Assembly (NCBI RefSeq): GCF_006345805.1
Contig: NC_043025.1
Span: forward strand, 5,828,001-5,892,000
Direction of reading: 5' to 3'
DNA: 64,000 bases
Source of the DNA: Octopus sinensis
Taxonomy: Eukaryota
A program made the translations under genes and the position numbers. Below are positions 2,594 through 40,800 of this stretch, piece after piece (position 1 is the stretch's first letter; each line of letters opens with the position of its first letter). Under the pieces are notes generated by a model, which saw only the letters and a list, made by a program, of their open reading frames with translations, did not search any database and was not told the DNA's origin.

Positions 2594-2800
2594 CTCGTCT
2601 TCTTGTTGTAGGGCGTGGGGATACTTGTCCCCTATGATCACGGCAGGCTCTCAGGCAATCCCCATCGCTATCGAACCTGTTCTCGTTTCCTCCACAACCA
2701 CCATACCAGAACTGTTTGCACCTTCTAGTCTCAGGGTCGTAGCCCCACTTCTGGGTGTAGTCAGAACAGGAACCGCGGTCGTGTTCTAAGGAACAGTGAG
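2594..2800 (-). CDS. Ppn: Exon 17: Kunitz type A'' + short linker, [12 protein letters not shown]...[21 protein letters not shown]
   Basis: tttgcag| acceptor, G|GTTTGT donor; 207 nt, phase 1-1. Frame absent from the ORF track. Confidence 0.9.
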
Positions 2801-5800
2801 CTGCAAAAAGGGAACAGATGAAGAGACAAATTAGAGGCAGGGACAGTGGCTTAAGGCATGATGACTATTTTTTTTACATAAGGTAGAAAAAGGGGCTGGA
2901 GTGACAGAATTCAGAAAATAAGGAACAAAGGGAATAAAAGTAAGATCCCTATTTTCATTTGTAAAGGATTAAAAGAAAACAAAAGCAATTTATTTTTACT
3001 CAAAGCAAAGCCAGATAAAACCCCGCATGCCAGTCTGTTGAATAACACTACCCTACCTATGCTTTTGTACACAAGTTAACTGTAGGCTACTAAGAGAGAA
3101 CATTAACCCTTTCATTACCAACCTGGCTGAAACCACCTCTGACTCTGTTGTACAAATGTCTTGTTTTCCTAAGTTTGGAATTAAAATCTTCCATCAAACC
3201 TTAGTCACAATTTATGTCACTAATACTAGCTTAATGATAACAAAGTTATTTTACTAAATTCTTTCTTATATTTAAAATTAATTGAAAGAAACACAGAGCA
3301 CCTCAACAGAAATATGGTAACAAAAGGGTTAAAGTCACCATGATATTTTTAACCCTTCTGATGCCAACCCGGCTGAAACCACCTCTGGTTCTGTAGTACA
3401 GATGTCTTGTTTTCCTAAGTTTTGAATTAAAATCTTCCACCAAACCTTAGTCACAATTTATGTTCCTAAAACTAGCTGAATGATAACTAAGTTATTTTAC
3501 TAAATTCTTTGTTATATTTAAAGTAATTGAAAGAAACACAGAGCACCTCAACAGAAATATGGTAACAAAAGGGTTAAAGTCACCATGATATTTTTACCCC
3601 TTTTGATACCAACCTGGCTGAAACCACTTCTGGCTCTGTAGTACAAATGTCTTGTTTCCGTAAGTTCTGAATTAAAATCTTCCACCAAACCTTAGTCACA
3701 ATTTATGTCACTAATACTAGCTGAATGATAACTAAGTTATTTTACTAAATTCTTTGTTATATTTAAAGTAATTGAAAGAAACACAGAACACCTCAAAATA
3801 AATATGGTAATGAAAGGGTTAAAGTCACCATGATATTTTTACCCCTTTTGATACCAACCTGGTTGAAACCACTTCTGGCTCTGTAGTACAGATGTCTTGT
3901 TCCCGTAAGTTCTGAATTAAAATCTTCCACCAAACCTTAGTCACAATTTATGTTCCTAAAACTAGCTGAATGATAACTAAGTTATTTTACTAAATTCTTT
4001 GTTATATTTAAAGTAATTGAAAGAAACACAGAACACCTCAAAATAAATATGGTAATGAAAGGGTTAAAGTCACCATGATATTTTTACCCCTTTTGATACC
4101 AACCTGGTTGAAACCACTTCTGGCTCTGTAGTACAGATGTCTTGTTCCGTAAGTTCTGAATTAAAATCTTCCACCAACCTTAGTCACAATTATGTTCCTA
4201 AAACTAGCTGAATGATAACTAAGTTATTTTACTAATTCTTTGTTATATTTAAAGTAATTGAAAGAAACACAGAACACCTCAAAATAAATATGGTAATGAA
4301 AGGGTTAAAGTCACCATGATATTTTTACCCCTTTTGATACCAACCTGGTTGAAACCACTTCTGGCTCTGTAGTACAGATGTCTTGTTCCCGTAAGTTCTG
4401 AATTAAAATCTTCCACCAAACCTTAGTCACATTTATGTTCCTAAAACTAGCTGAATGATAACTAAGTTATTTTACTAAATTCTTTGTTATATTTAAAGTA
4501 ATTGAAAGAAACACAGAACACCTCAAAATAAATATGGTAATGAAAGGGTTAAAGTCACCATGATATTTTTACCCCTTTTGATACCAACCTGGTTGAAACC
4601 ACTTCTGGCTCTGTAGTACAGATGTCTTGTTTTCCTAAGTTTTGAATTAAAATCTTCCACCAAACATTAGTCACAATTTATATTCCAAACACTAGCTGAA
4701 TGATAACTAAGTTATTTTACTAAATTCTTTGTTATATTTAAAATAATTGAAAGAAACACAGAACACCTCAAAATAAATATGGTAACAAAAGGGTTAATTG
4801 GTGACAACACAAAGGGCCGTAGAGAGATACATTTTCGTAACATATCAAAAATCAAGTAATGTGAGAATGAAGTGGAGTGAATGCTGTGACTATAGAACCA
4901 AAAGCACAAGTTCCACAGAGCTAGATATATGATAAGATTCACAGAAAACAGGTGGACCCATGTCGTTGCCAGGTAGTGTCTAAGAGATTTGAAAAGAGCC
5001 CTTAGAAGGCCTGCATGCTGATTAGAAGATGATTTAGTTAAATGAAAAGGGCTAAGAAGAAGGGTGCAATCAAGAAAGATCTGAAAGCGCATTGTGACTA
5101 GCAGTGTATAACCACACCTGCCAGTTTAAGTGATGCAGGTGGTACAGCTAAGAAGTTATATTTGCTTGTGACAGATGGCTAAGCTTTTCCAAAACTGAGA
5201 GAGGAATCAGAAAAATTGGTTTGCTGGTAGTTAATTAAATTGGTTTGTTGTTAATTAATTAAATTGGTTTGTGGTAAGTTAATTAAATGGTTTTTTGTCA
5301 GTTAATTAAATTGGTTTACTGTTAAATAATTAAATTGGCTTGTTATTAATTAATTAAATTGGTTTGTGGCAAGTTAATTAAATGGCTTTTTGTCAGTTAA
5401 TTAAATTGGTTTACTGTTAATTAATTAAATTGGCTTGTTGTTAATTAATTAAATTGGTTTGTGGTAAGTTAATTAAATGGTTTTTTGTCAGTTAATTAAA
5501 TTGGTTTACTGTTAATTAATTAAATTGGCTTGTTGTTAATTAATTAAATTGGTTTGTGGTAAGTTAATTAAATGGTTTTTTGTCAGTTAATTAAATTGGT
5601 TTACTGTTAATTAATAAATTGGCTTGTTGTTAATAATTAAATTGGTTTGTGGTAAGTTAATTAAATGGTTTTTTGTCAGTTAATTAAATTGGTTTACTGT
5701 TAATTAATTAAATTGGCTTGTTGTTAATTAATTAAATTGGTTTGTGGTAAGTTAATTAAATGGTTTTTTGTCAGTTAATTAAATTGGTTTACTGTTAATT

Positions 5801-7433
5801 AATTAAATTGGCTTGTTGTTAATTAATTAAATTGGTTTGTGGTAAGTTAATTAAATTGGTTTTTTGTCAGTTAATTAAATTGGTTTACTGTTAATTAATT
5901 AAATTGGCTTGTTGTTAATTAATTAAATTGGTTTGTGGCAAGTTAATTAAATGGTTTTTTGTCAGTTAATTAAATTGGTTTGTTATCAGTTAATTAAATT
6001 GGTTTGTTATCAGTTAATTAAATTGGTTTGTTGTCAGTTTATTAAATTGGTTTGTTGTCAGTTAATTAAATTGGTTTGTTGTCAGTTAATTAAATTGGTT
6101 TGTTATCAGTTAATTAAATTGGTTTTTTGTCAGTTAATTAAATTGGTTTGTTGTCAGTTAATTAAATTGGTTTTTTGTCAGTTAATTAAATTGGTTTGTT
6201 GTCAGTTAATTAAATTGGTTTTTTGTCAGTTAATTAAATTGGTTTGTTGTCAGTTAATTAAATTGGTTTGTTATCAGTTAATTAAATTGGTTTTTTGTCA
6301 GTTAATTAAATTGTTTTGTTGTCAGTTAATTAAATTGGTTTTTTGTCAGTTAATTAAATTGGTTTGTTGTCAGTTAATTAAATTGGTTTTTTGTCAGTTA
6401 ATTAAATTGGTTTGTTGAGCAGACAATCCATTTAAAGATCTGGGTTCTGTGACTAAGATTCTGTAGAAATCTTTAGAACTCACTGGGCTATAATGTAATG
6501 GAAAAGAATATAACAACAAAACAATACTAACCACCTCCGGACATAACTGGAGTTGGTGTTGGTGTTGGTCTTCGGGTGCTATGAGAACGAGGGTGGGTAA
6601 CAGTTGGAGTCCTTTAAGCGTGTGTATGTTTGTGTGTCTGTGTTTGTCCCCACAACATTGTTTGACAAATGATGCTGGTGTGTTTATGGCCCTGTAACTT
6701 AGTGGTTCAGCAAAAGAGACCGATAGAATAAGTACTAGGCTTACAAAGAATAAGTCCTGGGGCCGATTTGCTCAACTAAAGGCATTGCTCCAGCATGACT
6801 GCAGTCAAATGACTGAAATAAAAGGTAGTGATACAGACAACCCAATAATAAAAATAACTGTATAGTGATTCCAAAATATGCTCACCATTTTCTGCTATCA
6901 CTCGGGGACGGGTTACCTCAGGTCTTGTTGGTGTTGGTCTTCGGGTGCGAGGGTCGGTAACAGTTGGAGTCCTGTAATTCCGACAAGCTTTCAAGCAGGC
7001 CCTTTCATCGTCGAATCTGTTCGTATTTCCTCCACAACCACCGTACCAAAATTGTTTGCATCTTCTAGTTTCTGTGTCATAGGCCCACTTTTGTGTGTAG
7101 TCAGAACAGGTGCCACGAGCTGGTTCTGCAGAGCAGTGTACTGGAAACAGGGAACAGAGAAAAGAAAAGAAAAAAAAAAAACAAATGAGAGGCATAGATA
7201 TTAGATTCACATAAGATTTCAAATTTAAAAAAACCTTTAAAAAGATCAAAATAATGGGACGCTCAGGTAGAATTCTGAAATGGCTACAGAATAACAAGTG
7301 AAAGAGCAAATCGACCCTGGGACTTATTCTTTGTAAGCCCAGTACTTATTCTATCGGTCTCTTTTGCCGAACCGCTAAGTAACGGGGACGTAAGCACACC
7401 AGCATCGGTTGTCAAGCAATGCTAGGGGGACAA

Positions 7434-7478
<45 letters not shown>

Positions 7479-10400
7479 CGACAGGCTTCTTTCAGTTTCC
7501 ATCTACCAAATCCACTCACAAGGCATTGGTCGGCCCGGGGCTATAGCAGAAGACACTTGCCCAAGATGCCATGCAGTGGGACTGAACCCGGAACCATGTG
7601 GTTGGTTAGCAAGCTACTTACCACACAGCCACTCCTGCACCTATGGATATTAGAATAACAAGTGAAAGAATAACAGTCTCGCTCACATTCTTTCAAAGTA
7701 TTACCAAAAATGTTCTCACCATTTGCACCTGTGACTGGGGGCCTTGGTGTTGTCTCGACTGGTGGCCAGGTGCGACTGGGTGTTGGCCTAGTGTGAGGGT
7801 GAGTTAGGACCCACTGTGTTAAAACTTCATGAAAAAACAATAAACCAATACTAACCAATTCCGGGTGTAACTGGAGCGGGAGTTGATATTGGTGTTGGTC
7901 TTCGGGTGCGAGGGGTGGTAACAGTTGGAGTCCTGTAATTCCGACAAGCTTCCAAGCAGGCCCTTTCATCATCGAACCTGTTCGTATTTCCTCCACAACC
8001 ACCGTACCAAAATTGTTTGCATCTTCTAGTTTCTGTGTCATAGGCCCACTTTTGTGTGTAGTCAGAACAGGTGCCACGACCTGGTTCTGCAGAGCAGTGT
8101 ACTGGAAACAGGGAACAGAGAAAAGAAAAAAAAAATGAGAGGCATGAAGTTTATATTTACATAAGATTTCTAATTTTTATGGGGGAAAAAAAAATTTAGG
8201 GATTTTGGAGCATAATTCTGAAAATAAAACTGAACAACAATTTAAAAAAAATTTTCTGTTGCATGAAATTTTTTTACTGATTCTAACTATCTTTTTGGTG
8301 CTAATTTCAAATCTGTAATTAGTTTTTTCTCCATGCTCTGGTTTACTTGAAATTTGAGATGAATTTTTAATGTATTTATAGTTAGGTTTGACATATTTAG
8401 ATACACATGTCCTACTTACAAAGAATTGACAATTGTGGTTTTTGAGATCTGACCGTGGCTTTCTTAAGTAGACATAAATGTGTGAATAATCCTGGTGGCT
8501 TCTGCTAAGTCTGTGACTCCTTCACACTTATTCCTCAAAAGCACGATATCACATTGTTTGTGAGTTGGGCTTATAAAACCCATTTTGGAATTCCCCTAGG
8601 TGACCAAGACAAAAAATTGTGCACCTCATGCTGCATGTCATAACTGTGAGGAAATGCTTTGTGACTGGACAGAAGGAAAATGAAAGGGGCCTGCTGTTTG
8701 GAGTTCCTATGGTTTGGCAAAAGCCCAAGGACCAGACAAGTGATGGTTACTTTTGTATGGGCAACAGAAACGGCATTGGCAAGAAAAATAGGCTTAAGAT
8801 ATCTTATCCCAATATTCCTTGCCAGTGCCTTTTGTATTCATCATTCATCATCATCATCATCGTTTAGCGTCCGTTTTCCATGCTAGCATGGGTTGGACAG
8901 TTCTACTGGGGTCTGTGAAGCCAGAAGGCTGCATCAGGCCCAGTCTGATCTGGCAGTGTTTCTACAGCTGGATGCCCTTCCTAACACCAACCACTCCGTG
9001 AGTGTAGTGGGTGCTTTTTACGTGCCACCTGCACAGGTGCCAGATGGAGCTGGCAAACGGCCACGAATGGATGGTGCTTTTTATGTGCCACCGGCACGGG
9101 GGCCAGGCGAGGCTGGCAATGGACACGAACGGATGGTGCTTTTTATGTGCCACCGGCATGGGGGCCAGGCGAGGCTGGCAACGGACATGAATGGATGGTG
9201 CTTTTTATGTGCCACTGGCACTGGGGCCAGGCGAGGCTGGCAAACGGACACGAACGGATGGCGCTTTTTACCTGCCACCGGCACGAGGCCAGTCGGGGCG
9301 GCGCTGGCAACGGTCGCGAAACGGAAGGTTCTCTTACATGCCACCGGCACTGGTAACACATCTGCAATTTCCTTTGATCGATTTCGAGTATTGGCCATAC
9401 AAAAGTAACCCTCACTTGTGTGGCCCTTGGGCTCTTGACAAACCATTTAGACCTATTAAGCACTCTGAGACACTCCTGATTCCAGTTTTCCTTGGGTTGG
9501 CCTCTTCCGAACACAAAGCTAGCGAACAAAGTATGAAGATGATAATGAAGATCAAGAATTTATTTCAGAATCCAAGACACCTCTTATGGTACCATAAAAT
9601 CAACACCTCAACAGTTTAGCCAAACAGAACTGAATGATTTAGTGGGTGATTTGGGATTCTCCAAGACTGTAACTAAAGTTCTAGCATTCAGGTGACAAGA
9701 AAAACATCTGCTTGACCAAACTGCAAAAGTTTCGTATTTGCTGGAGCATTTAATGAGATTTCCTTGAGAAAGTCTAAAAATGCTAGAGTTCCAAGTGAAA
9801 ATTCTTGCCTGAGAAGGATCTGTTTGTGTTTTATTTTCCATCCTAATCTGTTTCACTCTTTTACTCTTTTACTTGTTTCAGTCATTTGACTGCGGCCATG
9901 CTGGAGCACCGCCTTTAGTCGAGCAAATCGACCTCGGGACTTATTCTTTTGTAAGCCCAGTACTTATTCTATCAGTCTCTTTTGCCGAACCGCTAAGTAA
10001 CGGGGACGTAAACACACCAGCATCGGTTGTCAAGCAATGCTAGGGGGACAAACACAGACACACAAACATACACACGCACATATATATATATATATATATA
10101 TACATATATACGACAGGCTTCTTTCAGTTTCCGTCTACCAAATCCACTCAAGGCTTTGGTCGGCCCGAGGCTATAGTAAAAGACACTTGCCCAAGATGCC
10201 ACGCAGTGGGACTGAACCCGGAACCATGTGGTTGGTAAACAAGCTACTTACCACACAGCCACTCCTGCGCCTAGTTATCAACTATTTACATCTCTCATTT
10301 GTATATACTATATATATCTTCAACTGTACAACAGATGGCACAAAAAAAGAAAGAAAAGAAAATGATGCATGAGAACATTTATTTTACACAGTATAGGTGC

Positions 10401-10555
10401 AGGAGTGGCGGTGTGGTAAGAAGCTTGCTTACCAACCACATGGTTCCGGGTTCAGTCCCACTGCATGGCACTTTGGGCAAGTGTCTTCTACTATAGCCTC
10501 GGGCCGACCAAAGCCTTGTGCGTGGATTTGGTAGACGGAAACTGAAAGAAGCCTG

Positions 10556-10611
<56 letters not shown>

Positions 10612-13600
10612 TTGTGTGTCTGTGTTTGTCCCCACAACATTGTTTGACAAATGATGCTGGTGTGTTTATGGCCCTGTAACTTAGTGGTTCAGCAAAAGAG
10701 ACCGATAGAATAAGTACTAGGCTTACAAAGAATAAGTCCTGGGGCCGATTTGCTCAACTAAAGGCATTGCTCCAGCATGGCTGCAGTCAAATGACTGAAA
10801 TAAAAGGTAGTGATACAGACAACCCAATAATAAAAATAACTGTATAGTGATTCCAAAATATGCTCACCATTTTCTGCTATCACTCGGGGACGGGTTACCT
10901 CAGGTCTTGTTGGTGTTGGTCTTCGGGTGCGAGGGTCGGTAACAGTTGGAGTCCTGTAATTCCGACAAGCTTTCAAGCAGGCCCTTTCATCGTCGAATCT
11001 GTTCGTATTTCCTCCACAACCACCGTACCAAAATTGTTTGCATCTTCTAGTTTCTGTGTCATAGGCCCACTTTTGTGTGTAGTCAGAACAGGTGCCACGA
11101 GCTGGTTCTGCAGAGCAGTGTACTGGAAACAGGGAACAGAGAAAAGAAAAGAAAAAAAACAAAACAAATGAGAGGCATAGATATTAGATTCACATAAGAT
11201 TTCAAATTTAAAAAAACCTTTAAAAAGATCAAAATAATGGCTACAGAATAACAAGTGAAAGAGTAAATCGACCCTGGGACTTATTCTTTGTAAGCCCAGT
11301 ACTTATTCTATCGGTCTCTTTTGCCGAACCGCTAAGTAACAGAGACGTAAGCACACCAGCATCGGTTGTCAAGCAATGCTAGTGGGGCAAACACACACAC
11401 ACATATATATATACATATATACAATAAAGGGTGGAATATAATTAATTCAATAAAATTAATCAATTTCACCTAGTAGATTTATCGGTATGGAAAAGACCAT
11501 ATTTGGTAAGGGTTATATACATATATACATATACATATATACGACAGGCTTCTTTCAGTTTCCATCTACCAAATCCACTCACAAGGCATTGGTCGGCCTG
11601 GGGCTATCGCAGAAGACACTTGCCCAAGATGCCACGCAGTGGGACTGAACCCGGAACCATGTGGTTGGTTAGCAAGCTACTTACCACACAGCCACTCGTG
11701 TGCCTATTTATATATATATATATATACATATATACGACAGGCTTCTTTCAGTTTCCGTCTACCAAATCCACTCACAAGGCATTGGTCGGCCCGGGGCTAT
11801 AGCAGAAGACACTTGCCCAAGATGCCATGCAGTGGGACTGAACCCGGAACCATGTGGTTGGTTAGCAAGCTACTTACCACACAACCACTCCTGTGCCTAT
11901 TTATATATATATATATATATGATGGGCTTCTTTCAGTTTCCGTCTACCAAATCCACTCACAAGGCATTGGTCGGCCTGGGGCTATCGCAGAAGACACTTG
12001 CCCAAGATGCCATGCAGTGGGACTGAACCCGGAACCATGTGGTTGGTTAGCAAGCTACTTACCACACAGCCACTTGTGTGCCTATTTATATATATATATA
12101 TATACATATATACGACAGGCTTCTTTCAGTTTCCGTCTACCAAATCCACTCACAAGGCATTGGTCGGCCCGGGGCTATAGCAGAAGACACTTGTCCAAGA
12201 TGCCACGCAGTGGGACTGAACCCGGAACCATGTGGTTGGTTAGCAAGCTACTTACCACACAGCCACTCGTGTGCCTATTTATATATATATATATATATAC
12301 ATATATACGACAGGCTTCTTTCAGTTTCCATCTACCAAATCCACTCACAAGGCATTGGTCGGCCCGGGGCTATAGCAGAAGACACTTGCCCAAGATGCCA
12401 TGCAGTGGGACTGAACCCGGAACCATGTGGTTGGTTAGCAAGCTACTTACCACACAGCCACTCGTGTGCCTATTTATATATATATACATATACATATATA
12501 CGACAGGCTTCTTTCAGTTTCCATCTACCAAATCCACTCACAAGGCATTGGTCGGCTCGGGGCTATAGCAGAAGACACTTGCCCAAGATGCCATGCAGTG
12601 GGACTGAACCCGGAACCATGTGGTTGGTTAGCAAGCTACTTACCACACAGCCACTCCTGCACCTATGGCTATTAGAATAACAAGTGAAAGAATAACAGTC
12701 TCGCTCACATTCTTTCAAAGTATTACCAAAAATGTTCTCACCATTTGCAACTGTGACTGGGGGCCTGGGTGTTGGCCTAGTGTGAGGGTGAGTTCTCCTG
12801 CTATGATCACGGCAGGCTCTCAGGCAATCCCCATCGCTATCGAACCTGTTCTCGTTTCCTCCACAACCACCATACCAGAACTGTTTGCACCTTCTAGTCT
12901 CAGGGTCGTAGCCCCACTTCTGGGTGTAGTCAGAACAGGAACCGCGGTCGTGTTCTAAGGAACAGTGATCTGCAAAAAAAAAAGAACAGGGGAACAGATG
13001 TAGAGATGAATTAGAATTCAGGGGCAGTAGCTTAAGGTAAGCTCCCTATTTTACTATTTGAATATGTAGTAGTAGTAGAAGTACTGGGTACTTTTCATGT
13101 GAAACCCGCACATATGAGCCCACAATATATATATGTATGTATGTATGTATATATATATATGTGTATATATATAAATAAAGATAAGATTGATATTTAAATA
13201 TCGATCTTATCAAGTGGCCAGCATGGGAATAAAAACCTTACAAAGGTAATAATTATTTAAAATTATAATTTAGGGTATCTGAGAGATACCATCACGCTGA
13301 AATAGCAGTCAAAACCTGACCCTAGAGCCACATTAAAGGTTCATATAACACTAAGAGAGTAGACAGAGAGGCAAAATAAACTAGCAAAGTAAAATACATA
13401 TATATATATCACATCACATGATCACATGACCGACCAGACCATCAGATGTTGCTACACATCGCTGGTCACAATGCGTTCGCATTGTTTTAGCCTTCGAATG
13501 ACGCCACCCCGCTGGCTAAGCGAGCAGGCCAACAGAAGAAAGAGTGGTGAAAGAGTACAGCAGGCATCACCACCCCCTGCCGGAGCCTCGTGGAGCTTTA

Positions 13601-14113: not shown

Positions 14114-15424
14114 TATGTATATATACAACTTATAAACAAGGGCTAAAGAAAATTATTTCTATGCCAATATGCTGATAACAGACTTTTAAATCGTCAATTA
14201 CCACATATTATTTACTCACTACAGAAAGCACGTAGAGTTGAAATCGAGGAAAGCTGGCCAAAAGAATTTTTTAAAATGTTCGTTATTTCTATATTGAATC
14301 AATTTCGGAATTAATCTCATAATAGATTTTTTTCCTCTTCAGTAGAAAATACGAAAAGGCATAAATGAAATGGCCAGCTTTCCTCGATTTCAGCTCTACG
14401 TGTTTTCTGTAGCGAGTAAATAATATGTGGAAATTGAAGATTTAAAAGTCTGTTATAAGCATATTGGCATAGAAATTTGTATTAAAAAAAAAGTACAAGG
14501 GCTGATTTGTTTGACAAAAAGCTTTCAGTTCAGTGCTCCAGCATGGCAGTAGTCTAATAACAAAAACAAATAAAAAACAAAATTATAAAAGGTATGTATA
14601 TGTTACCTGCTGCAGTTGTTCCTGCGGAACAGCCAGCGTAGTTTGGGCCTTCAGCTGTGGTCACGCCATCGGGGCAACATCCATAGTCAGTATTTTGACA
14701 ACCAGGGCAGCCAGCATAGTTGGGACCCCGCGCGTAACTTACACGGTCAGGACAGCAGCCGTAAGAACTGTCAACACAACTGGTTGGGGTGGAACATCCA
14801 GCATGGCCTGGTCCTTGGGCAGCAGTCCTGCGATCTGGGCAACACCCATAGAGAGTCTCCCAGCAAGATACCTACATGTTTGATGAGGGCAGGAAAGAAA
14901 GAGAGAGAGAGAGAGAGAGAGGAGATGAAAACAGCTGTGATTATAATTATTACAAAATAGAGAGAGAGAGGAATAAATAGATGAATGGGTGGATTGATGG
15001 ATAGAGAGACAGACACACAAGTAGATAGATAGATATAGAAATAGATAGATAGATAGATAGATATATAGATAGACAGAGAGACAGATAGATAGACAGAGAG
15101 ACAGATAGATAGACAGAGAGGCAGATAGATAGACAGAGAGGCAGATAGATAGACAGAGAGGCAGATAGATAGACAGATAGATAGACAGACATGTAGATAG
15201 ATAGATAGATAGATAGGTAGGTAGGTAGATAGATAGATAGACAGACAGACAGATAGACAGACAGATAGATAATAGATAGATAGATAGATAGATATATAGA
15301 TAGATATATAGATAGATAGATAGACAGATAGATAGACAGAGAGACAGATAGATAGACAGATAGGCAGATAGATAGACAGATAGATAGACAGACGTGTAGA
15401 TAGATAGATAGATAGGTAGGTAGG

Positions 15425-30966: not shown

Positions 30967-33900
30967 AATTGGAAGAAGAAGATGAAGAAGAAGGAGAAGG
31001 AGGAGGAGAAGAAGAAGAAGAAGCAGAAGAAGAAGAAGAAGAAGAAGAAGAAGACAACAGCCTGGCCAATCTGGATGTTGGGACACACAATGTCAAAAGA
31101 GAGCCCACTGGTCAATCTATACATTCTGCTATACAAGGAGCATGAGTGGTCAAGTTGGGTGTCCCATTGGCAGAAACAAAAGCACGAACCACCCTGTCTG
31201 GTGAAGATGCACCAACAATGATGCCACCCCCAACAAACAGAACAGGATTGCGGGGACACAAAAATAATGCAAACTATATAATAGGCGTAGGAGTGGCTGT
31301 GTGGTAAGTAGTTTGCTTACCAACCACATGGTTCCGGGTTCAGTCCCACTGCGTGGCACCTTGGGCAAGTGTCTTCTACTATAGCCTCAGGCCGACCAAA
31401 AACCTTGTGAGTGGATTTGGTAGACAGAAACTGGAAGAAGCCCGTCGGATATATGTATATATATGTGTATGTAATTGTATATGTTTGTGTGTCTGCGTTT
31501 GTCCCCCCAGCATTGCTTGACAACGGATGCTGGTGTGTTTACGTCCCCGTAACTTAGCGGTTCGGCAAAAGAGCCCGATAGAATAAGTACTAGGCTTACA
31601 AAGAATAAGTCCTGGGGTCGATTTGCTCGACTAAAGGTGGTGCTCCAGCATGGCCACAGTCACATGATGAAACAAGTAAAAATTAAAAATTGAAAAAAAA
31701 ATACAAGTCTAGACCCAATTGCTTGCCCTCAGTCCCAACAGACCACCAGTGCCCGACCTGCGGCAGAGCCCTCAAGGTACGTATCAAGCTGATCAGCCAC
31801 AGCTGGACACACTGTGCCCTATCTTCTTCTCCTATGTCATATCTTTGGTCATCGTCGGCAATGAAGGACAAAGTAATAATAGATAGGGACACCTCTGTGA
31901 CCACACTTTTGGCTGTGTAGGCCTGCCTTTGAGAAGCATCCATAACTGCACGGGTTACATGAAAGAGACCCTTTTCTGTGCTTCTCAGGGAGAGGGTTCA
32001 CATCGTCTATATACTTGCCAGCACATTTAAATTCAATGAATACAACCCTGTTATTCTCAAATTTTTAACACCCCTAGCAATCAGACCCTTCCACAGACCC
32101 CTCCCTGAATCAAGATCTTCCCAGGTATTTGTATAGATATCAATCTTCTTTTTAAGCACATCTTTAAGATTGCCCTCAAAGCACTTGCATAGCTTGCAAT
32201 GGGAATGTTTTCCTTGCTCCAATTCACCAAACATCCCCTGTTTTGGCATGTGAGAGCCCTCTAAATGAACAAAATGACCAGACCATCTAAGCTGGTGCTT
32301 CATAAACATGGACTTGATATTCATCGTTCTCCCCAGCTACCGTATTCCCATATTGGGTGCACGAGATCCCCATGAGATCTTCAGGATATTGTGCAAACAA
32401 GACGAGTTTGTTTGTTCCTTTGTTCCTTCTCGAGCCATGCCTGGCTCATAAGGGCCAGTTTCCCGTCTTCTTTGGCGCATAGGTTCCCCACCTGGACAGG
32501 ACGCCGGTCCGTCACAGGTGAGCCACAAGATGCAGGAGGAAAGGGGGAGAGAAAGTTGTGGCGAAAGAGTCAGCAGAAGTTCGCCATTACCTTCTGCCGG
32601 AGCCGCTTGGAGTTTAGGTGTTTTTACTCATAAACACACACATCGCCCGGTCTGAGATTCGAACCCACGATCCCTCAAACGCGAGTCCACTGCTCTAACC
32701 ACTAGGTCATGTGCTTCCACAATGTTCCTTCTCAAGCCACACCTGGCTCATAAGGGCCGGTTTCCCGGTTTCCTTGGCATATAGGTTCCCCACTTGGATG
32801 GGACGTCGGTCCGTCACAGGTGACCCGCAAGATGCAGGAGGAAAGGGTGAGAGAAAGTTATGGCGAAAGAGTCAGCAGAAGTTTGGCATTACCTTCTGCC
32901 GGAGCCGCGTGGAGCTTAGGTGTTTCGCTCATAAACACACACATCGCTCGGTCTGAGATTTGAACCCGCGATCTCTTGACCGCGAATCCGCTGCTCTAAC
33001 CATAAGGCTATGTGCCTCCACAACAAGATGGGTAAGGGTGATTAGGTGATAGTCTAGGGCTTAGGGGCAGGAGACCCCAGACCTTGGAAGAAAAAAAAAA
33101 ACTTTGGTCATCTTGTTGTAGTCGAGGGTTCTTTGTTGACGCCTGACACCACTGGGAGGTGGCCCTCGAAGTCGCTGGAAGTGGAGATCTCCAGGTCCAA
33201 ATTCCTGAACGGCTGTTGTTGTTGTTGTTGTTGTTGTTAAGCAACAAGATGGGTAAGGGTGATTAGGTGATGGTCTAGGGCTTAGGGGCGGGAGACCCCA
33301 GACCTTGGAAGAAAAAAAAAAAAACTTTGGTCATCTTGTTGTAGTCGAGGGCTCTTCGTTGACGCCCGACACCACTGGGAGGTGGTCCTCGAAGTCGCTG
33401 GAAGTGGAGATCTCCATGTCCAAATTCCTGAATGGCTGTTGTTGTTGTTGTTGCTGTTTTTGCTGTTGTTGTTGCTGTTTTTGTTGTTGTTGTTGTTAAG
33501 CAACAAGATGGGTAAGGGTGATTAGGTGATGGTCTAGAGCTTAGGGGTAGGAGACCCCATACCTTAGAAGAAAAAAAAAAAAACTTTGGTCGTCTTGTTG
33601 TAGTCGAGGGCTCTTCGTTGACGCCCGACACCACTGGGAGGTGGCCCTCGAAGTCGCTGGAAGTGGAGATCTCCAGGCCCAAATTCTTGAACGACGGTGG
33701 AATCACTTGAGATGTTGTTTATGCATGCGATAGGTTTTCTAGGTCTTGCATCTGCGCATGCATTTGATCATGCATACATCTGCATATACATGTAAAAACT
33801 AACAAAGCACGCCCACACCCATGCACTGAAGAGACCCGCCCCCACAGAACGCATAAATGCAGGTGCATACACCTACATTCATGCACAGACTAACTGAACC

Positions 33901-34818: not shown

Positions 34819-37800
34819 CGCAGGAGTGGCTGTGTGGTAAGTAGCTTGTTTACCAACCACCTGGTTCCGGGTTCAGTCCCACTGCGTGGCATCTTGGGCA
34901 AGTGTCTTCTACTATAGCCTCGGGCCGACCAATGCCTTGTGAGTGGATTTGGTAGACGGAAACTGAAAGGAGCCCATCGTATATATGTATATATATATAT
35001 ATATGTGTGTGTATGTGTTTGTGTGTCTGTATTTGTCCCCCTAGCATTGCTTGACAACCGATGCTGGTGTGTTTATGTCCCCGTTACTTAGCAGTTCGGC
35101 AAAAGAGACCGATAGAATAAGTACTGGGCTTACAAAAGAATAAGTCCCGGGGTCGATTTGCTCGACTAAAGGCGGTGCTCCAGCATGGCCGCGGTCAAAT
35201 GACTGAAACAAGTAAAAGAGTAAAAGAGAGTAAAGAGTATAACAAAATGATGACACTGGAAAAAACAAATATATATACATGCATATACACATACTTTTGC
35301 ACACACATGCACACATCTATATATATACACTATATATATACATAAAGCACAGGTTTGCGGCTATGAACTCCTCCCCCACCCCCCTACTCTCCTGACCTTG
35401 CACCCTCTGATTTTCACCTCTTCCCAGCCATGAAGTTGTTTTTGAAAGGAAAGCGTTTCCCAGATGATGCAGCCTTGATTTCTGAAGTTACGTCGTGGTT
35501 GGAGGACCAAGCTGGGGTCTTCTACAAAAACACGGTCTCCAGAGCTGCATCAAACGATGGGAGAAATGTGTAACTCTGGGTGGTTCCTATGTAGGGAAAG
35601 ACTAATAACTGTGCCAAGTGTCGTTGCTCTACTGCTATGGGAAGTGGGTCAGGGGCATTACTTATTGAACGCCCCTCGTATTAGGGGACTAGTATACTTT
35701 CTTGCATTATAGCAGTCTTCAAGGTCCCAGGTTGTGACAGGAGTGTTTCAATATATACACTCCCTCATGCAGATCTACATGTACACCCTCCTATCCACAC
35801 TAACACGTATACAGCTTCAGAAAGTGAAGAACACTGACCATTCTTGAGTTTAGTGGTTTCCACAGACTTCTTGACTGTCTTGCAGTGTTTTCCTTCACCT
35901 CCACAGATCCTGCAGGCGTCCTCTGCTTTGGAAGACCCAAGTACTCGATCACAGCCAACGCTCTGAAAAAAAAAGGAAAAGAACAAATGAAATGACAACA
36001 ACAACAGCAACATGAATGAATGCAAAGGTCCAAGAAAAGCTGCTTCCCTCAGCTACTGACCCCCGGCTAACCCTCCTTGTAGGGGAAAGAAGTGGAACCA
36101 AAGGTGTTACTCTCCTTCTACCTATTTCTTTACTACCCACAAGGGGCCAAACATAGAGGAGACAAACAAGGACAGACAACCAGATTAAGCCGATTATATC
36201 GACCCCAGCGTGTAACTGGTACTGATTTAATCGACCCCGAAAGGATGAAAGGCAAAGTCAACCTTGGCAGAATTTGAACTCAGAACGTAACGGTAGATGA
36301 AATACCTATTTCTTTACTACCCACAAGGGGCTAAACACAGAGAGGACAAACAAGGACAGACAAACGGATTAATTCGATTATATCGACCCCAGTGCGTAAC
36401 TGGTACTTAATTTATCGACCTTGAAAGGATGAAAGGCAAAGTCGACCACGGCGGAATTTGAACTCAGAACGTAGAGGCAGACGAAATACCTATTTCTTTA
36501 CTACCCACAAGGGGCTAAACACAGAGGGGACAAACAAGGACAGACAAACGGATTAAGTCGATTATATCGACCCCAGCGCGTAACTGGTACTTATTTAATC
36601 GACCCCGAAAGGATGAAAGGCAAAGTCGACCTCGGCGGAAATTGAACTCAGAACATAGCAGCAGATGAAATACCTATTTCTTTACTACCCACAAGGGGCT
36701 AAACACAGAGGGGACAAACAAGGACAGACAAACGGATTAAGTCGATTATATCGACCCCAGTGCATAACTGGTACTTATTTAATCGACCTCGAAATGATGA
36801 AAGGCAAAGTCGACCTCAGCAGAATTTGAACTCAGAACGTAACGGCAGACAAAATACCTATTTCTTTACTACCCACAAGGGGCTAAACAGAGAGGGGACA
36901 AACAAGGACAAACAAGGACAGACAAACGGATTAAGTCGATTATATCGATGAAAGGATGAAAGGATGAAAGGCAAAGTCGACCTCAGCAGAATTTGAACTC
37001 AGAACGTAATGGCAGACGAAATACCACTAAGTATTTCGCCCGGCGTGCTAACAATTCTGCTAGCTCTCCTTCTACCGGTACACGGCTTCTTTACAACCCA
37101 ATACTACAAAGCCACCTTCCTGGTAACTGGGTGCTGCAAGGTACCCAGTTGTCCTGTTTCTTAACAGTAAGGGATCTTGGAGCAGCAGTGGCCATAAGAG
37201 AGTAAGTAGGACATTGTATGAACAGTGTTATCACTAAATAGAAAACATATTATCTCCTTATCTCCTCAAAGACATACATCATCTCGAAAGAGTCCAGAAG
37301 CTGGCTACCCGCATGGTTCTTGGTCTCAAGAATTTGTCTTATGAAGAAAGGCTGAAGACGCTCGACCTTTATTCTCTAGAAAAACACAGCTGCTGTGGTG
37401 ATCTCATTCTTGCTCACAACATCATAAGTGGAAAGTGTAACCTCTCGAAAGAGCTGTTCTTCACTCCTGCTCCAGAGCGTCGGCTGCGGGGTCACTCCGG
37501 AAAGCTCTATCTGCGACGATTTCATCTCAATCGAAGGAGAGAGGCTTTCTCCGTCCGGGTCGCGGATCCGTGGAATAAGCTGCCGGACGAGATAGTGAAG
37601 ATGCCGACGACTGCTCAGTTCAAAGTCTCTCTTGACCAGAAATGGCCTGAACTCTTTGCATGAACACCCTCCCTGTGCATAACTCCATGTCCCCCTACAT
37701 GGCCTTGCATTTTGCTTTTTGAGCCCAAAAATTAACTTAACTTAACTTAACTTATAACTGATGAAGTAGCAAGGCCTGATATGATTCCGTTGTGGAAGTC

Positions 37801-40800
37801 CACATCTTATTTATTTAATAATTCAACATAGAGGGCACAAGTCCATATAAATGTTTTTTTGTGTAGCAGGACTTTGTGTTATCAATGACTTATAATGTAC
37901 CAAAATCTGATATAATTTCATATGGAGGCGTGTGGCTTTGTGGTTAGGGTGTCAGCATCATGATCAGTGTCGATAAATTAAGAACCAGTTGCATATTGGG
38001 GTCAATCTAATCAACTGGCCCCTTCCCGCAAAATTTCAGGCCTTGTGGCTGAAGTAGAAAAAAATTGGAATCTTGATCACTTGGTTTCATAACCTCAATC
38101 CCTAACCACTGAACTACACACAGTCATCCTTAAGATGAAGCCACTTAAGATAAAGGAAGGAAAATGAAGAAAGAAAAAGAGTCATGTCACTGGGTTTCTT
38201 ACCTTACATGTGCCATCAACACACACCTCCGTGCCATGTGCATTACATGAGGTACCATCCACGACCTTGCCCTTCATGGTTTCTCGCAAGGTTCCGTTCA
38301 CAGCTGAACATACCAAGGCACATCTGTCAGCATCATCTATAAAGGGACACACAGACACATTACGAAATGGTTTAAAAAATGCTTGAGATAACTTGTTGAT
38401 TTTAAACATTTTTCACACTATTGACTTAATGTCTGGAGAGGGGATGACGAGAAGAAAAATGGTTAGTATATACATCTACCCAATGTTTCACTAACTTTGA
38501 TCTTTGATAATCATTATTATAGTCAGGTGTCTTATTCCTGGATGTGTACATAGAACTTCTCACAGCGAACTGCTCACAGCAAGCTGCTCACAGCAAACTG
38601 CTCACAGTGAACTGCTCACAGCGAACTGCTCACAGCGAACTGCTCACAGCGAACTGCTCACAGCGAACTGCTCACAGCGAACTGCTCACTCGAACTGCTC
38701 ACAGCGAACTGCTCACAGCGAACTGCTCACAGCGAACTGCTCACAGCGAACTGCTCACAGCGAACTGCTCACTCGAACTGCTCACAGCGAACTGCTCACA
38801 GCGAACTGCTCACAGCGAACTGCTCACAGCGAACTGCTCACAGCGAACTGCTCACTCGAACTGCTCACAGCGAACTGCTCACAGCGAACTGCTCACAGCG
38901 AACTGCTCACAGTGAACTGCTCACAGCGAACTGCTCACAGTGAACTGCTTACAGCGAACTGCTCACAGCGAACTACTCACAGCGAACTGCTCACAGCGAA
39001 CTGCTCACAGCAAACTGCTCACAGCGAACTGCTCACAGCAAACTGCTCACTCGAACTGCTCACCTCGAACTGCTCACAGCGAGCTGCTCACAGCAAGCTG
39101 CTCACAGCGAACTGCACACAGCGAACTGCTCACAGCTCACAGCGAACTGCTCACAGCAAACTGCTCACAGTGAACTGTTCACAGGGAACTGCTCACAGCA
39201 AACTGCTCACAGGGAGCTACTCACAGTGAACTGCTCACAGCGAACTGCTCACAGGGAACTGCTCACAGCAAACTGCTCACAGCGAACTGCTCACAGCAAA
39301 CTGCTCACTCGAACTGCTCACAGCGAACTGCTCACAGCGAACTGCACACAGCGAACTGCTCACAGCTCACAGCGAACTGCTCACAGCAAACTGCTCACAG
39401 CGAACTGTTCACAGGGAACTGCTCACAGCAAACTGCTCACAGGGAACTACTCACAGTGAACTGCTCACAGCGAACTGTTCACAGCGAACTGCTCACAGGG
39501 AACTGCTCACAGCGAACTGCTCACAGCGAACTGCTCACAGCGAACTGCTCACAGCGAACTGCTCACAGGGAACTGCACACAGCGAACTGCTCACAGCGAA
39601 CTGCTCACAGGGAACTGCTCACAGTGAACTGCTCACAGCGAACTGCTTACAGTGAATTGCTCACAGTGAACTGCTCACAACGAACTGCTCACAGCGAACT
39701 GCTCACAGCGAACTGCTCATAGCGAACTGCTCACAACAAACTGCTCACAGCAAACTGCTCACAGCGGACTGCTCACAGCGAACTGCTCACAGGGAACTGC
39801 TCACAGGGAACTGCTCACTTGAACTACTCACAGCGAACTGCTCACAGCGAACTGCGCACAGCAAACTGCTCACAGCGAACTGCTCACAGCGAACTGCTCA
39901 CAGCGAACTGTTCACAGGGAACTGCTCACAGCAAACTGCTCACAGGGAACTACTCACAGTGAACTGCTCACAGCGAACTGTTCACAGCGAACTGCTCACA
40001 GGGAACTACTCACAGTGAACTGCTCACAGCGAACTGTTCACAGCGAACTGCTCACAGGGAACTGCTCACAGGGAACTGCTCACAGCGAACTGCTCACAGC
40101 GAACTGCTCACAGGGAACTGCACACAGTGAACTGCTCACAGCGAACTGCTCACAGTGAACCTCTCACAGCGAACTGCTCACAGGGAACTGCTCACAGTGA
40201 ACTGCTCACAGCAAACTGCTCACAGCGAACTGCTCACAGTGAACTGCTCACAATGAACAGCTCACATGAACTCAATTGCTGTCTATTTAATAGATATGTG
40301 TCAGTCCAATTTTAGTCACATAGAAGGAATTCTTCCACAACACTTTGTGTGTAATGCCGAGGGAGGTAATAACTTGAATGGAGAAAGATATATATATAAA
40401 TTGTTTTGTTTTACTTGTCTCAGTCATTTGACTGTGGCCATGTTGGAGCACCATCTTTAGTCAAACGAATCGACTCCAGGACTTATTCTTTGTAAGCCTA
40501 GTACTTATTCTATTGGACTCTTTTGCCAAATCACTAAGTTACAGGTTTGTAAACACACCAACATTGGTTGTCAAGCGATGTTGGGAGGGACAAACACAGA
40601 CACACACACGGCAGGCTTCTTTCAGTTTCTGTCAACAAATCCACTCACAAGGGTAGAATAGAAGACACTTGCCCAAGGTGCCATGCAGTGGGTTCAGTCC
40701 CACTGCATTACTACAACTATTATTATTATTATTATTATTATTATCATTATCATCTATTTTCATTCTCTTCTACCTAAGATTAAACCTGTATACTCACCGC

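What the first reader, a model, noticed from the sequence alone, without database searches (positions are those of the whole stretch)
2594..12969. Papilin Kunitz exon array in active birth-and-death with an A-B-C triplet pattern
In transcription order the array reads A, B, C, (A' linker only), B', (C' linker only), A''. Every intact unit is a symmetric phase 1-1 exon coding one Kunitz domain plus a variable Thr/Pro/Arg linker, so units can be duplicated, lost or skipped in frame (seen). The pattern fits tandem duplication of a three-exon cassette followed by two deletions of Kunitz halves (inference). Papilins have variable, alternatively spliced Kunitz numbers (established). A still-turning-over cassette could give copy-number or isoform diversity of a cephalopod matrix protein.
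Basis: partly seen in the sequence, partly recalled or inferred. Interest (0 to 1): 0.7.

Follow-up and report, generated by a model that had tools for sequence, protein, structure and literature searches.

The report
Octopus papilin Kunitz exon array
This is a real run of duplicated protease-inhibitor (Kunitz) exons in the Octopus sinensis papilin gene; it was built by an old 5-kb tandem duplication and is kept similar by gene conversion, which is an ordinary way for repeat-domain genes to evolve.

Summary
On the minus strand there are five intact Kunitz-plus-linker exons, all phase 1-1: A 12969-12742, B 11122-10868, C 8101-7856, B' 7140-6886 and A'' 2800-2594. There are also two linker-only remnants: A' 7805-7720 and C' 6617-6532.

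The window is Octopus sinensis chromosome CM016887.1, and the gene is papilin (TSP1, ADAMTS cysteine-rich domain, TSP1 repeats, lagrin repeats, then Kunitz domains).

- **Same array in O. vulgaris.** An independent O. vulgaris assembly has the same seven-part array with the same junctions. It is therefore not an assembly artefact, but it was also fixed before the two species split.
- **A' is a breakpoint.** A' marks the edge of one ~5-kb tandem duplication running from the A linker to about 50 bp past C. It is not a deleted Kunitz half.
- **A'' is not a third cassette.** It is the old terminal unit, and its own linker is conserved in O. bimaculoides.
- **What is active is gene conversion.** B and B' are identical within each species but differ by 3/255 between species. 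Six central sites carry species-specific states shared by both copies, while flanking sites keep orthology. A and A'' are homogenised only across the Kunitz-coding 178 bp.
- **Deeper turnover.** O. bimaculoides gene models have 4 units; Argonauta has 5, four of them near-identical.

RefSeq models omit C and one B copy through a 4,989-nt GC-AG "intron".

The parts
12742..12969 (-). Exon A: Kunitz domain plus the short Thr/Pro/Arg linker ([20 protein letters not shown]). Phase 1-1, 228 nt. It has a 33-nt deletion compared with A' and with O. vulgaris A.
10868..11122 (-). Exon B: Kunitz domain plus linker ([32 protein letters not shown]). Phase 1-1, 255 nt.
7856..8101 (-). Exon C: B-type Kunitz domain (97% identical to B at DNA level) with a C-type linker tail (..[11 protein letters not shown]). 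Donor is G|GTTAGT. Phase 1-1, 246 nt.
7720..7805 (-). A' remnant: long-form A linker tail ([28 protein letters not shown]) with an intact GTGAGA donor and no Kunitz part. Homology to A's downstream intron continues to 7449. The upstream edge at 7805/7806 is the duplication junction J1.
6886..7140 (-). Exon B': 255/255 nt identical to B. Phase 1-1.
6532..6617 (-). C' remnant: C-type linker plus GTTAGT donor. It has no Kunitz part and no usable phase-1 acceptor. It abuts the (CA)n tail of the SINE-like element downstream of B' (junction J2).
2594..2800 (-). Exon A'': A-type Kunitz domain (1/178 nt different from A) with its own linker ([13 protein letters not shown]). Phase 1-1, 207 nt. It is the last unit before lagrin block 2, which lies outside the window.
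7806..12795 (-). Copy 1 of the tandem duplication: A-linker tail, A-B intron, B, B-C intron, C, and about 50 bp past the C donor.
   Evidence: (4,989-nt period)
6500..7805 (-). Copy 2 of the tandem duplication: A' tail, intron, B', SINE-like element, C' remnant. It lacks the B-C intron and the C' Kunitz part.
10609..11158 (-). Gene-conversion tract, B side; the partner on the B' side is 6627-7176. Six sites (11050, 11022, 10976, 10827, 10756, 10657) carry species-specific states shared by B and B'. Paralogue-specific sites bound the tract at 11160 and 10608.
12801..12978 (-). Gene-conversion patch, A side; the partner in A'' is 2632-2809. It covers the Kunitz-coding part only, with 1/178 mismatches. 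The flanks are about 25% diverged and keep the orthology pattern.
14607..14871 (-). Upstream exon encoding three lagrin-type Cys repeats (GCCPD..GP..GC). It ends in phase 1 and feeds exon A.
   Evidence: repeat name from PMC11844652

Best explanation
The region is the first Kunitz sub-array of the Octopus sinensis papilin gene. It lies between two blocks of lagrin repeats.

**Inferred history**
1. The ancestral octopus array was about four class 1-1 exons: A, two B/C-type units and A''. This is what the O. bimaculoides models still show.
2. Before O. sinensis and O. vulgaris split, one ~5-kb head-to-tail duplication occurred. Its left breakpoint was inside the A linker and its right breakpoint about 50 bp past the C donor. 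It copied [A-linker tail - intron - B - intron - C] and gave A, B, C, A'-tail, B', C'.
3. A later deletion ran from the microsatellite tail of the SINE-like element behind B' into exon C'. It removed the C' Kunitz half and its acceptor.

**Shown directly**
- The resulting structure is fixed and identical in both species.
- Non-reciprocal exchange (gene conversion) continues between the copies. B and B' (4 kb apart) are kept identical over about 550 bp. C is partly drawn in. The Kunitz-coding 178 bp of A and A'' (10 kb apart) are homogenised, while their linkers and introns stay distinct.

**Consequences**
- Because all five exons are phase 1-1, any subset can be spliced out in frame.
- Whether C and the second B copy are actually included in mRNA is unknown.
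- The encoded segment is a string of Kunitz domains joined by Thr/Pro/Arg-rich linkers. By position relative to the second cysteine, the P1 residue is inferred to be Ser. These are therefore probably not classical trypsin inhibitors.
For: **Identity of the gene**
- The window is 100% identical to GCA_006345805.1 CM016887.1.
- Minus-strand exons hit TSP_1, ADAMTS_CR_3, TSP1_ADAMTS (twice) and Kunitz_BPTI.
- They match RefSeq papilin XP_036370796.1.

**Duplication**
- DNA homology includes introns: 6620-7470 vs 10602-11426, and 7449-7752 vs 12471-12774.
- Junction J1 is identical in O. vulgaris.
- The O. vulgaris locus is collinear and holds the same five exons and both remnants.

**Gene conversion**
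- B vs B' is 0/255 within each species and 3/255 between species.
- In the four-way alignment, sites at the block edges show the pattern 'B differs from B', shared across species'. Six central sites show the pattern 'species-specific, shared by both paralogues'.
- Two of these species-specific states also occur in C.
- For A/A'', about 25 paralogue-specific sites lie in the 100 bp upstream and more lie in the linker. None lies between -9 and +168, and one concerted site lies at +57.
- At protein level, A and A'' group by species across O. sinensis/O. vulgaris and O. bimaculoides, while their linkers group by position.

**Baseline**
- Substitution divergence between the two species at this locus is 1-4%.

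**General mechanism**
- Unequal crossing-over of class 1-1 modules is an established mechanism (PMC3927616).
Against: - **Uneven divergence.** The C and C' linkers differ at 28/115 sites, whereas the A/A' and B/B' blocks differ by 2.3% or less. A single duplication explains this only if the whole 1.2-kb A'-B' block was homogenised later. The alternative two-step history cannot be excluded.
- **No outgroup DNA.** DNA for O. bimaculoides and Argonauta could not be retrieved. The 'ancestral four units' rests on gene models, which can miss exons or remnants.
- **Conflict with RefSeq.** RefSeq models for O. sinensis join the A Kunitz part to the A' tail and contain only A-B-A''. That fits neither canonical splicing nor the assembled sequence.
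- **Short patches in C.** Conversion-like and C-specific sites are interleaved over a few bases. Some of these shared states could be parallel changes.
Confidence: 0.6

Rival explanations
1. A three-exon cassette (A-B-C) was tandemly repeated to give ABC-ABC-A. Two separate deletions then removed the Kunitz halves of A' and C'. The array is still actively gaining and losing units.
For: - The periodic order A, B, C, A', B', C', A'' is real.
- All Kunitz exons share acceptor-flank similarity.
- The upstream introns of A and A'' can be aligned at about 75% identity over roughly 100 bp.
- Unit number differs among octopods.
Against: - The linker and downstream intron of A'' are unrelated to those of A. 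The A'' linker is conserved by position in O. bimaculoides.
- A' starts exactly at the end of C-downstream homology, as a duplication junction would.
- The arrangement is identical in O. vulgaris, so nothing has been gained or lost since that split.
- The near-identity of A and A'' is confined to 178 coding bp, which indicates conversion rather than a recent cassette copy.
Confidence: 0.12
2. A two-step history. C and C' are an old tandem pair. Much later, a 1.2-kb piece (A-linker tail, intron, B, SINE-like element) was copied and inserted between them in one replication-based event. That same event replaced the C-C' intron and the C' Kunitz half.
For: - C/C' linkers are about 25% diverged, while the A'/B' block is 2.3% or less from A/B.
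- The young, high-identity block is bounded exactly by junctions J1 and J2.
Against: - It needs a complex copy-and-replace event.
- Conversion is shown to act on this very block, so low divergence does not prove recent origin.
- O. bimaculoides models have only two middle units.
Confidence: 0.2
3. The duplication is an assembly artefact, such as a false tandem duplication of haplotypes. The true locus would be A-B-A'', as in the RefSeq protein.
For: - The RefSeq model XP_036370796.1 reads K_A + A'-type linker, then B, then A''. It needs a 4,989-nt 'intron' equal to the repeat period, with only GC-AG ends available.
Against: - An independent assembly of another species (O. vulgaris, GCA_951406725.2) has the same structure and junctions, with no gap in the array.
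- The window contains no N.
- The copies differ at fixed paralogue-specific sites that are shared between the two species.
Confidence: 0.03
4. The 5-kb unit is a segregating copy-number variant. Recombination between the A linker and the A' tail (or between B and B') would produce 3-unit alleles, A(long linker)-B-A''. The transcripts behind the RefSeq model would come from such an allele.
For: - The RefSeq mRNA is exactly the product expected from recombination between A and A'.
- Long, 98-100% identical direct repeats are available as substrates.
Against: - No read-level data were available.
- The same model would also arise from mapping reads of a long-linker A allele, or from model-building on identical exons.
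- Both reference assemblies carry the 5-unit form.
Confidence: 0.15

Closest known systems
Papilin / MIG-6 / lacunin of arthropods and nematodes (ADAMTS-like matrix glycoproteins)
   Same: [quoted passage not shown] The tick protein has 10 Kunitz domains, then WAP, Ig and PLAC (PMC3160391). MIG-6 has the papilin cassette, lagrin repeats and Kunitz domains, with short and long isoforms (PMC11844652). Several isoforms are reported in Drosophila and Apis.
   Different: Here the first Kunitz sub-array sits between two lagrin blocks. Its units carry Thr/Pro/Arg linkers. It also shows exon-level remnants and within-gene conversion, which the papers I found do not describe for papilin.
Tandem duplication and deletion of class 1-1 modules by unequal crossing-over (Patthy's exon-shuffling rules)
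   Same: The units are symmetric phase 1-1 domain exons. The duplication includes intron sequence. Gain or loss is in frame (PMC3927616).
   Different: One breakpoint falls inside an exon (the A linker) rather than in an intron. This left a spliceable-looking but Kunitz-less linker remnant.
Concerted evolution of tandemly duplicated exons or repeats within a gene (e.g. Dscam exon clusters, PMC3236188; spider silk genes, PMC9779670)
   Same: Paralogous exons are more alike within a species than orthologues are between species. The exchange tracts are bounded.
   Different: Dscam clusters are mutually exclusive alternative exons. There is no evidence for that here, and the array is small (five units).
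Apolipoprotein(a) kringle IV-2 copy-number array (recalled from memory, not checked here)
   Same: It is an in-frame, ~5-kb repeat unit encoding a disulfide-rich domain, with near-identical copies prone to unequal recombination.
   Different: LPA copy number is highly polymorphic within a species. Here both reference genomes carry the same number, and polymorphism is untested.

Membership tests
Papilin (ADAMTS-like, Kunitz-bearing matrix protein) | N-terminal 'papilin cassette': TSP1, ADAMTS cysteine-rich region and spacer, then further TSP1 repeats, with no metalloprotease domain | tested here: met
   Pfam hits on minus-strand exons at 46.1 kb, 41-35.8 kb, 20.7/19.6 kb and 16.9 kb: TSP_1, ADAMTS_CR_3, TSP1_ADAMTS twice. 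ADAMTS_spacer1 is recorded for the gene product. The product starts with a signal-like peptide followed directly by TSP1.
Papilin (ADAMTS-like, Kunitz-bearing matrix protein) | Cysteine-rich lagrin repeats between the cassette and the Kunitz domains | tested here: met
   Three GCCPD..GP..GC repeats are encoded at 14871-14607. There is no Pfam hit. They are identified by motif and by position, as described in PMC11844652.
Papilin (ADAMTS-like, Kunitz-bearing matrix protein) | Tandem Kunitz/BPTI domains | tested here: met
   Five six-cysteine Kunitz units. Pfam PF00014 scores E=9.5e-37 for two of them.
Papilin (ADAMTS-like, Kunitz-bearing matrix protein) | C-terminal Ig domains and a PLAC domain | tested here: inconclusive
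   This part lies outside the window. The O. sinensis RefSeq models end after six Kunitz domains. The Argonauta orthologue carries I-set/Ig_3 domains.
Tandem exon duplication of class 1-1 modules | Symmetric phase 1-1 exons, each encoding one domain | tested here: met
   Exon lengths are 228, 255, 246, 255 and 207 nt. AG/GT boundaries and the reading frame were checked.
Tandem exon duplication of class 1-1 modules | Copies share intron as well as exon sequence, head to tail, with an identifiable junction | tested here: met
   Blocks 10602-11426/6620-7470 and 12471-12774/7449-7752 are homologous. Junction J1 at 7805/7806 is shared with O. vulgaris.
Concerted evolution by gene conversion | Paralogues share species-specific states while flanking sites keep orthologous (paralogue-specific) states | tested here: met
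   Four-way site patterns for B/B' and A/A''. B vs B' is 0/255 within each species and 3/255 between species.
Active birth-and-death of units | Degenerate or partial units lie beside intact ones | tested here: met
   The A' and C' remnants.
Active birth-and-death of units | Unit number or arrangement differs between close relatives or between individuals | tested here: not met
   O. sinensis and O. vulgaris have identical arrangements. Differences appear only against O. bimaculoides (4 units) and Argonauta (5 units), at gene-model level. Individuals were not testable.
Alternatively spliced cassette-exon array | Transcripts that include different subsets of the units | not testable with these tools
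   No read-level RNA data were available. RefSeq and ENA models contain A-B-A'' only. RefSeq isoform X2 skips a different Kunitz exon farther downstream.

The most novel reading that the evidence does not exclude
The 4,989-bp repeat unit is a segregating copy-number variant in O. sinensis. Unequal recombination between the A linker and the A' remnant would produce 3-unit alleles alongside 5-unit alleles. Alternatively, the linker-only A' remnant is really spliced, either through the GC-AG sites or as the open 105-nt phase 1-1 mini-exon at 7824-7720. Either way, individuals or tissues would make papilins with different numbers of Kunitz domains and different linkers. The odd RefSeq model would be the first trace of this.
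Probability: 0.15. Interest if true: 0.45.

Novelty: new member of a known kind. Interest (0 to 1): 0.3.

Why it matters
- **A clean worked example.** It shows how a repeat-domain matrix gene changes: one exon-breaking tandem duplication, one partial loss, then continued gene conversion. The conversion homogenises the domain-coding parts and leaves linkers and introns free to diverge.
- **Practical consequence for annotation.** The current O. sinensis RefSeq papilin models, and the O. vulgaris model, lack two of the five Kunitz units. The O. sinensis models also contain a chimeric first unit made through a 4,989-nt GC-AG 'intron'. Anyone counting Kunitz domains or comparing cephalopod papilins from these proteins will be misled.
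- **Limits.** It does not open a new kind of mechanism. No functional consequence has been shown.

Tried and rejected
- **Protein searches with short queries.** Searches with the 5-Kunitz concatenate and with N-terminal exons found no cephalopod protein. The listed hits never exceeded 1.75 times the query length. A query padded to 2,106 aa then found the O. vulgaris, O. bimaculoides and Argonauta papilins.
- **Look-ups of window ORFs.** Exact-product look-ups of window ORFs spanning junction J1 and exon B' found nothing.
- **Outgroup DNA.** O. bimaculoides and Argonauta DNA could not be fetched. The product was either not on record or the gene range exceeded 100 kb. The duplication could therefore not be dated with an outgroup.
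- **Lagrin exon.** Pfam gave no hit for it.
- **Further remnants.** Low-stringency tblastn for more Kunitz remnants found none.
- **Canonical splicing for the RefSeq model.** I looked for a GT-AG solution that reproduces the RefSeq protein from the assembly. There is none; only two GC-AG placements work.
- **Splicing of the remnants.** C' has no in-frame symmetric exon with a plausible acceptor. A' has one open 105-nt candidate, but its acceptor lies only 31 nt after the C donor.
- **Assembly artefact.** Rejected, because O. vulgaris shares the structure.

Full report
**1. What is there**

The window is eukaryotic, AT-rich and full of SINE-like and microsatellite repeats. A six-frame scan for the six-cysteine Kunitz pattern finds five genuine units, all on the minus strand. 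Reading the sequence and translating the spliced exons gives these exons:

| Unit | Window coordinates | Length (nt) |
|---|---|---|
| A | 12969-12742 | 228 |
| B | 11122-10868 | 255 |
| C | 8101-7856 | 246 |
| B' | 7140-6886 | 255 |
| A'' | 2800-2594 | 207 |

- Each exon follows a polypyrimidine tract and AG, and precedes GT. Each has a length divisible by three and begins with two bases that finish a codon.
- C ends at its own donor (G|GTTAGT), and an in-frame TAG follows immediately.
- Two partial units exist. A' (7805-7720) is an A-type linker tail with A's donor and about 270 bp of A's downstream intron. C' (6617-6532) is a C-type linker with the GTTAGT donor.
- Low-stringency tblastn finds no other Kunitz remnant in the window.

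**2. Which gene, which genome**

- Minus-strand open frames upstream hit Pfam TSP_1 (46.1 kb), ADAMTS_CR_3 (41-35.8 kb) and TSP1_ADAMTS (20.7/19.6 kb and 16.9 kb).
- The exon at 14871-14607 encodes three GCCPD..GP..GC repeats. These match the 'lagrin repeats' that lie between the papilin cassette and the Kunitz domains in MIG-6/papilin (PMC11844652).
- Tick papilin has the same order of domains, with ten Kunitz units (PMC3160391).
- After I padded the query to get round a length filter, the best protein matches were papilins of O. vulgaris, O. bimaculoides and Argonauta hians. Their cluster also holds O. sinensis papilin isoforms X1 and X2.
- The O. sinensis locus (GCA_006345805.1, CM016887.1) is 100% identical to window 50999-1.
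- The gene is therefore O. sinensis papilin. The Ig/PLAC end lies outside the window.

**3. Anatomy of the duplication**

Self-comparison shows these relationships:

| Compared segments | Result |
|---|---|
| A linker tail + intron (12774-12471) vs 7752-7449 | 5/304 mismatches |
| Intron upstream of B vs upstream of B' | 7/303 mismatches, plus indels |
| Exon B vs exon B' | 0/255 |
| Downstream of B vs B' (to the (CA)n tail of a SINE-like element) | 2/266 |
| C vs B, from about -35 to +210 | 7/247 |
| C linker tail vs C' remnant | about 11% (local alignment) to 25% (MAFFT) diverged, with indels |

- After +210, C switches to a different linker tail, which is the type shared with C'.
- A' begins exactly where similarity between the C and C' downstream introns ends, about 50 bp past the C donor.
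- The simplest reading is one head-to-tail duplication of [A-linker tail ... B ... C + ~50 bp]. Its present period is 4,989-5,022 bp. J1 (7805/7806) is its junction.
- A later deletion (J2) ran from the SINE microsatellite into exon C' and removed the C' Kunitz half.
- A' is therefore a breakpoint product, not a deleted exon.

**4. A'' is not a third cassette**

- A and A'' share only 12978-12801 / 2809-2632, with 1/178 mismatches.
- The 100 bp upstream can be aligned but are about 25% diverged. The linkers and downstream introns are unrelated.
- The A'' linker (RDHRG.V..RPTTRRR) and its position directly before the second lagrin block are conserved in O. bimaculoides. The A linker ([21 protein letters not shown]) is also conserved there.

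**5. Comparison with O. vulgaris**

- The O. vulgaris locus (L001, GCA_951406725.2) is collinear with the window. Substitution divergence is 1-4%.
- It has the same seven elements:

| Element | L001 coordinates |
|---|---|
| A | 32156-32415 |
| B | 33103-33357 |
| C | 36049-36294 |
| A' | 36345-36701 |
| B' | 37017-37271 |
| C' | 37540-37657 |
| A'' | 41704-41910 |

- The J1 sequence is identical in the two species. There is no gap in the array; the only N run in L001 is at 82 kb.
- The structure is therefore real and predates the split of the two species.

**6. What is active: gene conversion**

- *B and B'.* They are identical in each species but differ by 3/255 between species.
- *Site patterns around B/B'.* In the four-way alignment of the 850-bp B blocks, sites at the edges (window 11160 and upstream of it, and 10608) separate B from B' in both species. 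Six central sites (window 11050, 11022, 10976, 10827, 10756 and 10657) separate the species, and both paralogues share the state. This pattern requires exchange between B and B' after speciation in at least one lineage.
- *C.* Two of the species-specific states are also present in C, interleaved with C-specific sites.
- *A and A''.* No paralogue-specific site lies between -9 and +168. One site (+57) is species-specific in both copies. Three singletons occur in O. vulgaris.
- *Deeper comparison.* At protein level, A and A'' differ by 0/51 in O. sinensis, 2/51 in O. vulgaris and 4/51 in O. bimaculoides. They differ by 9/51 between O. sinensis and O. bimaculoides. The Kunitz parts have evolved in concert while the linkers have not.

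**7. Deeper turnover**

- Gene models from two O. bimaculoides annotation releases show four units in this sub-array.
- The Argonauta model shows five. Units 1 and 2 are identical, units 3 and 4 are identical, and all four have identical linkers. The fifth is a distinct terminal unit.
- Unit number and identity therefore change among octopod lineages. This rests on protein models, because the DNA could not be fetched.

**8. Dating problem and rival history**

C/C' linkers are far more diverged than A/A' or B/B'. Two explanations remain:
- One duplication was followed by homogenisation of the whole 1.2-kb A'-B' block.
- C/C' is an old pair and the A'-B' block was inserted later.

Conversion is demonstrably acting on this block, so divergence cannot decide between them. 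Outgroup loci would.

**9. Annotation conflict**

- RefSeq X1 and X2 read: A Kunitz part, then [31 protein letters not shown] (the A'-type long linker), then B, then A''.
- Deriving this from the assembly needs a 4,989-nt intron whose ends lie in the 31 nt shared by A and A'. No GT-AG placement exists. Only two GC-AG placements work: 12777|7787 and 12765|7775.
- The assembled A exon has a 33-nt deletion compared with A' and with O. vulgaris A. The deletion is flanked by CAACACC(C/A)AG repeats.
- Possible causes are reads from a long-linker allele mapped across the repeat, a 3-unit allele made by recombination between A and A', or real weak splicing. I cannot tell which.
- The O. vulgaris model also has A-B-A'', so no accessible model includes C or a second B.
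- RefSeq X2 differs from X1 by in-frame loss of a different, downstream Kunitz exon of 83 aa. In-frame Kunitz-exon skipping is therefore at least predicted for this gene.

**10. Can the remnants be spliced?**

- C' has no symmetric open exon with a usable acceptor.
- A' has one open 105-nt phase 1-1 candidate (7824-7720). Its acceptor lies 31 nt after the C donor, so it could be used only when C is skipped.

**11. Verdict**

- This is a new, well-resolved instance of a textbook process: unequal crossing-over of class 1-1 modules (PMC3927616) combined with concerted evolution of duplicated exons.
- My literature searches found no description of it in cephalopod papilin.
- Interest is modest. 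Its main value is the annotation correction and a testable hint of copy-number or isoform variation.

Noticed in passing
window 11516-12666: The A-B intron holds about six tandem copies of a 193-bp SINE-derived unit. As a result the intron is 1,619 bp in O. sinensis but 687 bp in O. vulgaris, so the expansion happened after the species split.
   Followed up: partly
window 3103-4797 and 5213-6417: The C'-A'' intron holds two large tandem arrays: a 246-bp unit in about seven copies, and a 48/95-bp minisatellite of about 1.2 kb. Both are present in O. vulgaris but align out of register there.
   Followed up: no
window 12765-12777 and 7775-7787: RefSeq papilin models XP_036370796.1 and XP_036370797.1 can be derived from this assembly only through a 4,989-nt GC-AG intron. 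Its ends lie in a 31-nt repeat, and B and C fall inside the 'intron'.
   Followed up: yes
window 12766-12775 (A linker) vs 7776-7742 (A'): Exon A has a 33-nt in-frame deletion compared with A' and with O. vulgaris A. The deletion is flanked by CAACACC(C/A)AG direct repeats, which suggests replication slippage or a polymorphic allele.
   Followed up: partly
window 7720-7824: There is an open, symmetric 105-nt linker-only mini-exon candidate encoding ..[34 protein letters not shown]. It has an AG acceptor after a T-rich tract, but the acceptor lies only 31 nt downstream of the C donor.
   Followed up: partly
L002 about 66.6 kb (outside the window, downstream in the gene): RefSeq isoform X2 lacks an 83-aa Kunitz exon (ATTPTAADDVCKLPK...SRDPL) that X1 has. 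This is a predicted in-frame skip of a Kunitz exon in the same gene.
   Followed up: no
window 38553-40272: A long minisatellite with a period of 14 bp lies in the intron between ADAMTS cysteine-rich exons. It produces many offset matches to O. vulgaris.
   Followed up: no
all five Kunitz exons, e.g. window 12937-12935: The residue after the second cysteine (the P1 position, by analogy with BPTI-type inhibitors) is Ser in every unit. Classical trypsin-type inhibition is therefore unlikely. This is an inference from sequence only.
   Followed up: no
O. bimaculoides gene model P0362 (XP_052834080.1): The 2,248-aa model ends in chitin-binding (CBM_14) domains. It spans 151 kb and has two other genes (TMEM120, BolA) on the opposite strand inside it. 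It is probably a fusion of papilin with a neighbouring gene.
   Followed up: no
tool behaviour: In all three searches, the search for homologous proteins listed no hit longer than 1.75 times the query (693 for a 396-aa query, 1,045 for 597). Long orthologues are missed unless the query is long.
   Followed up: yes
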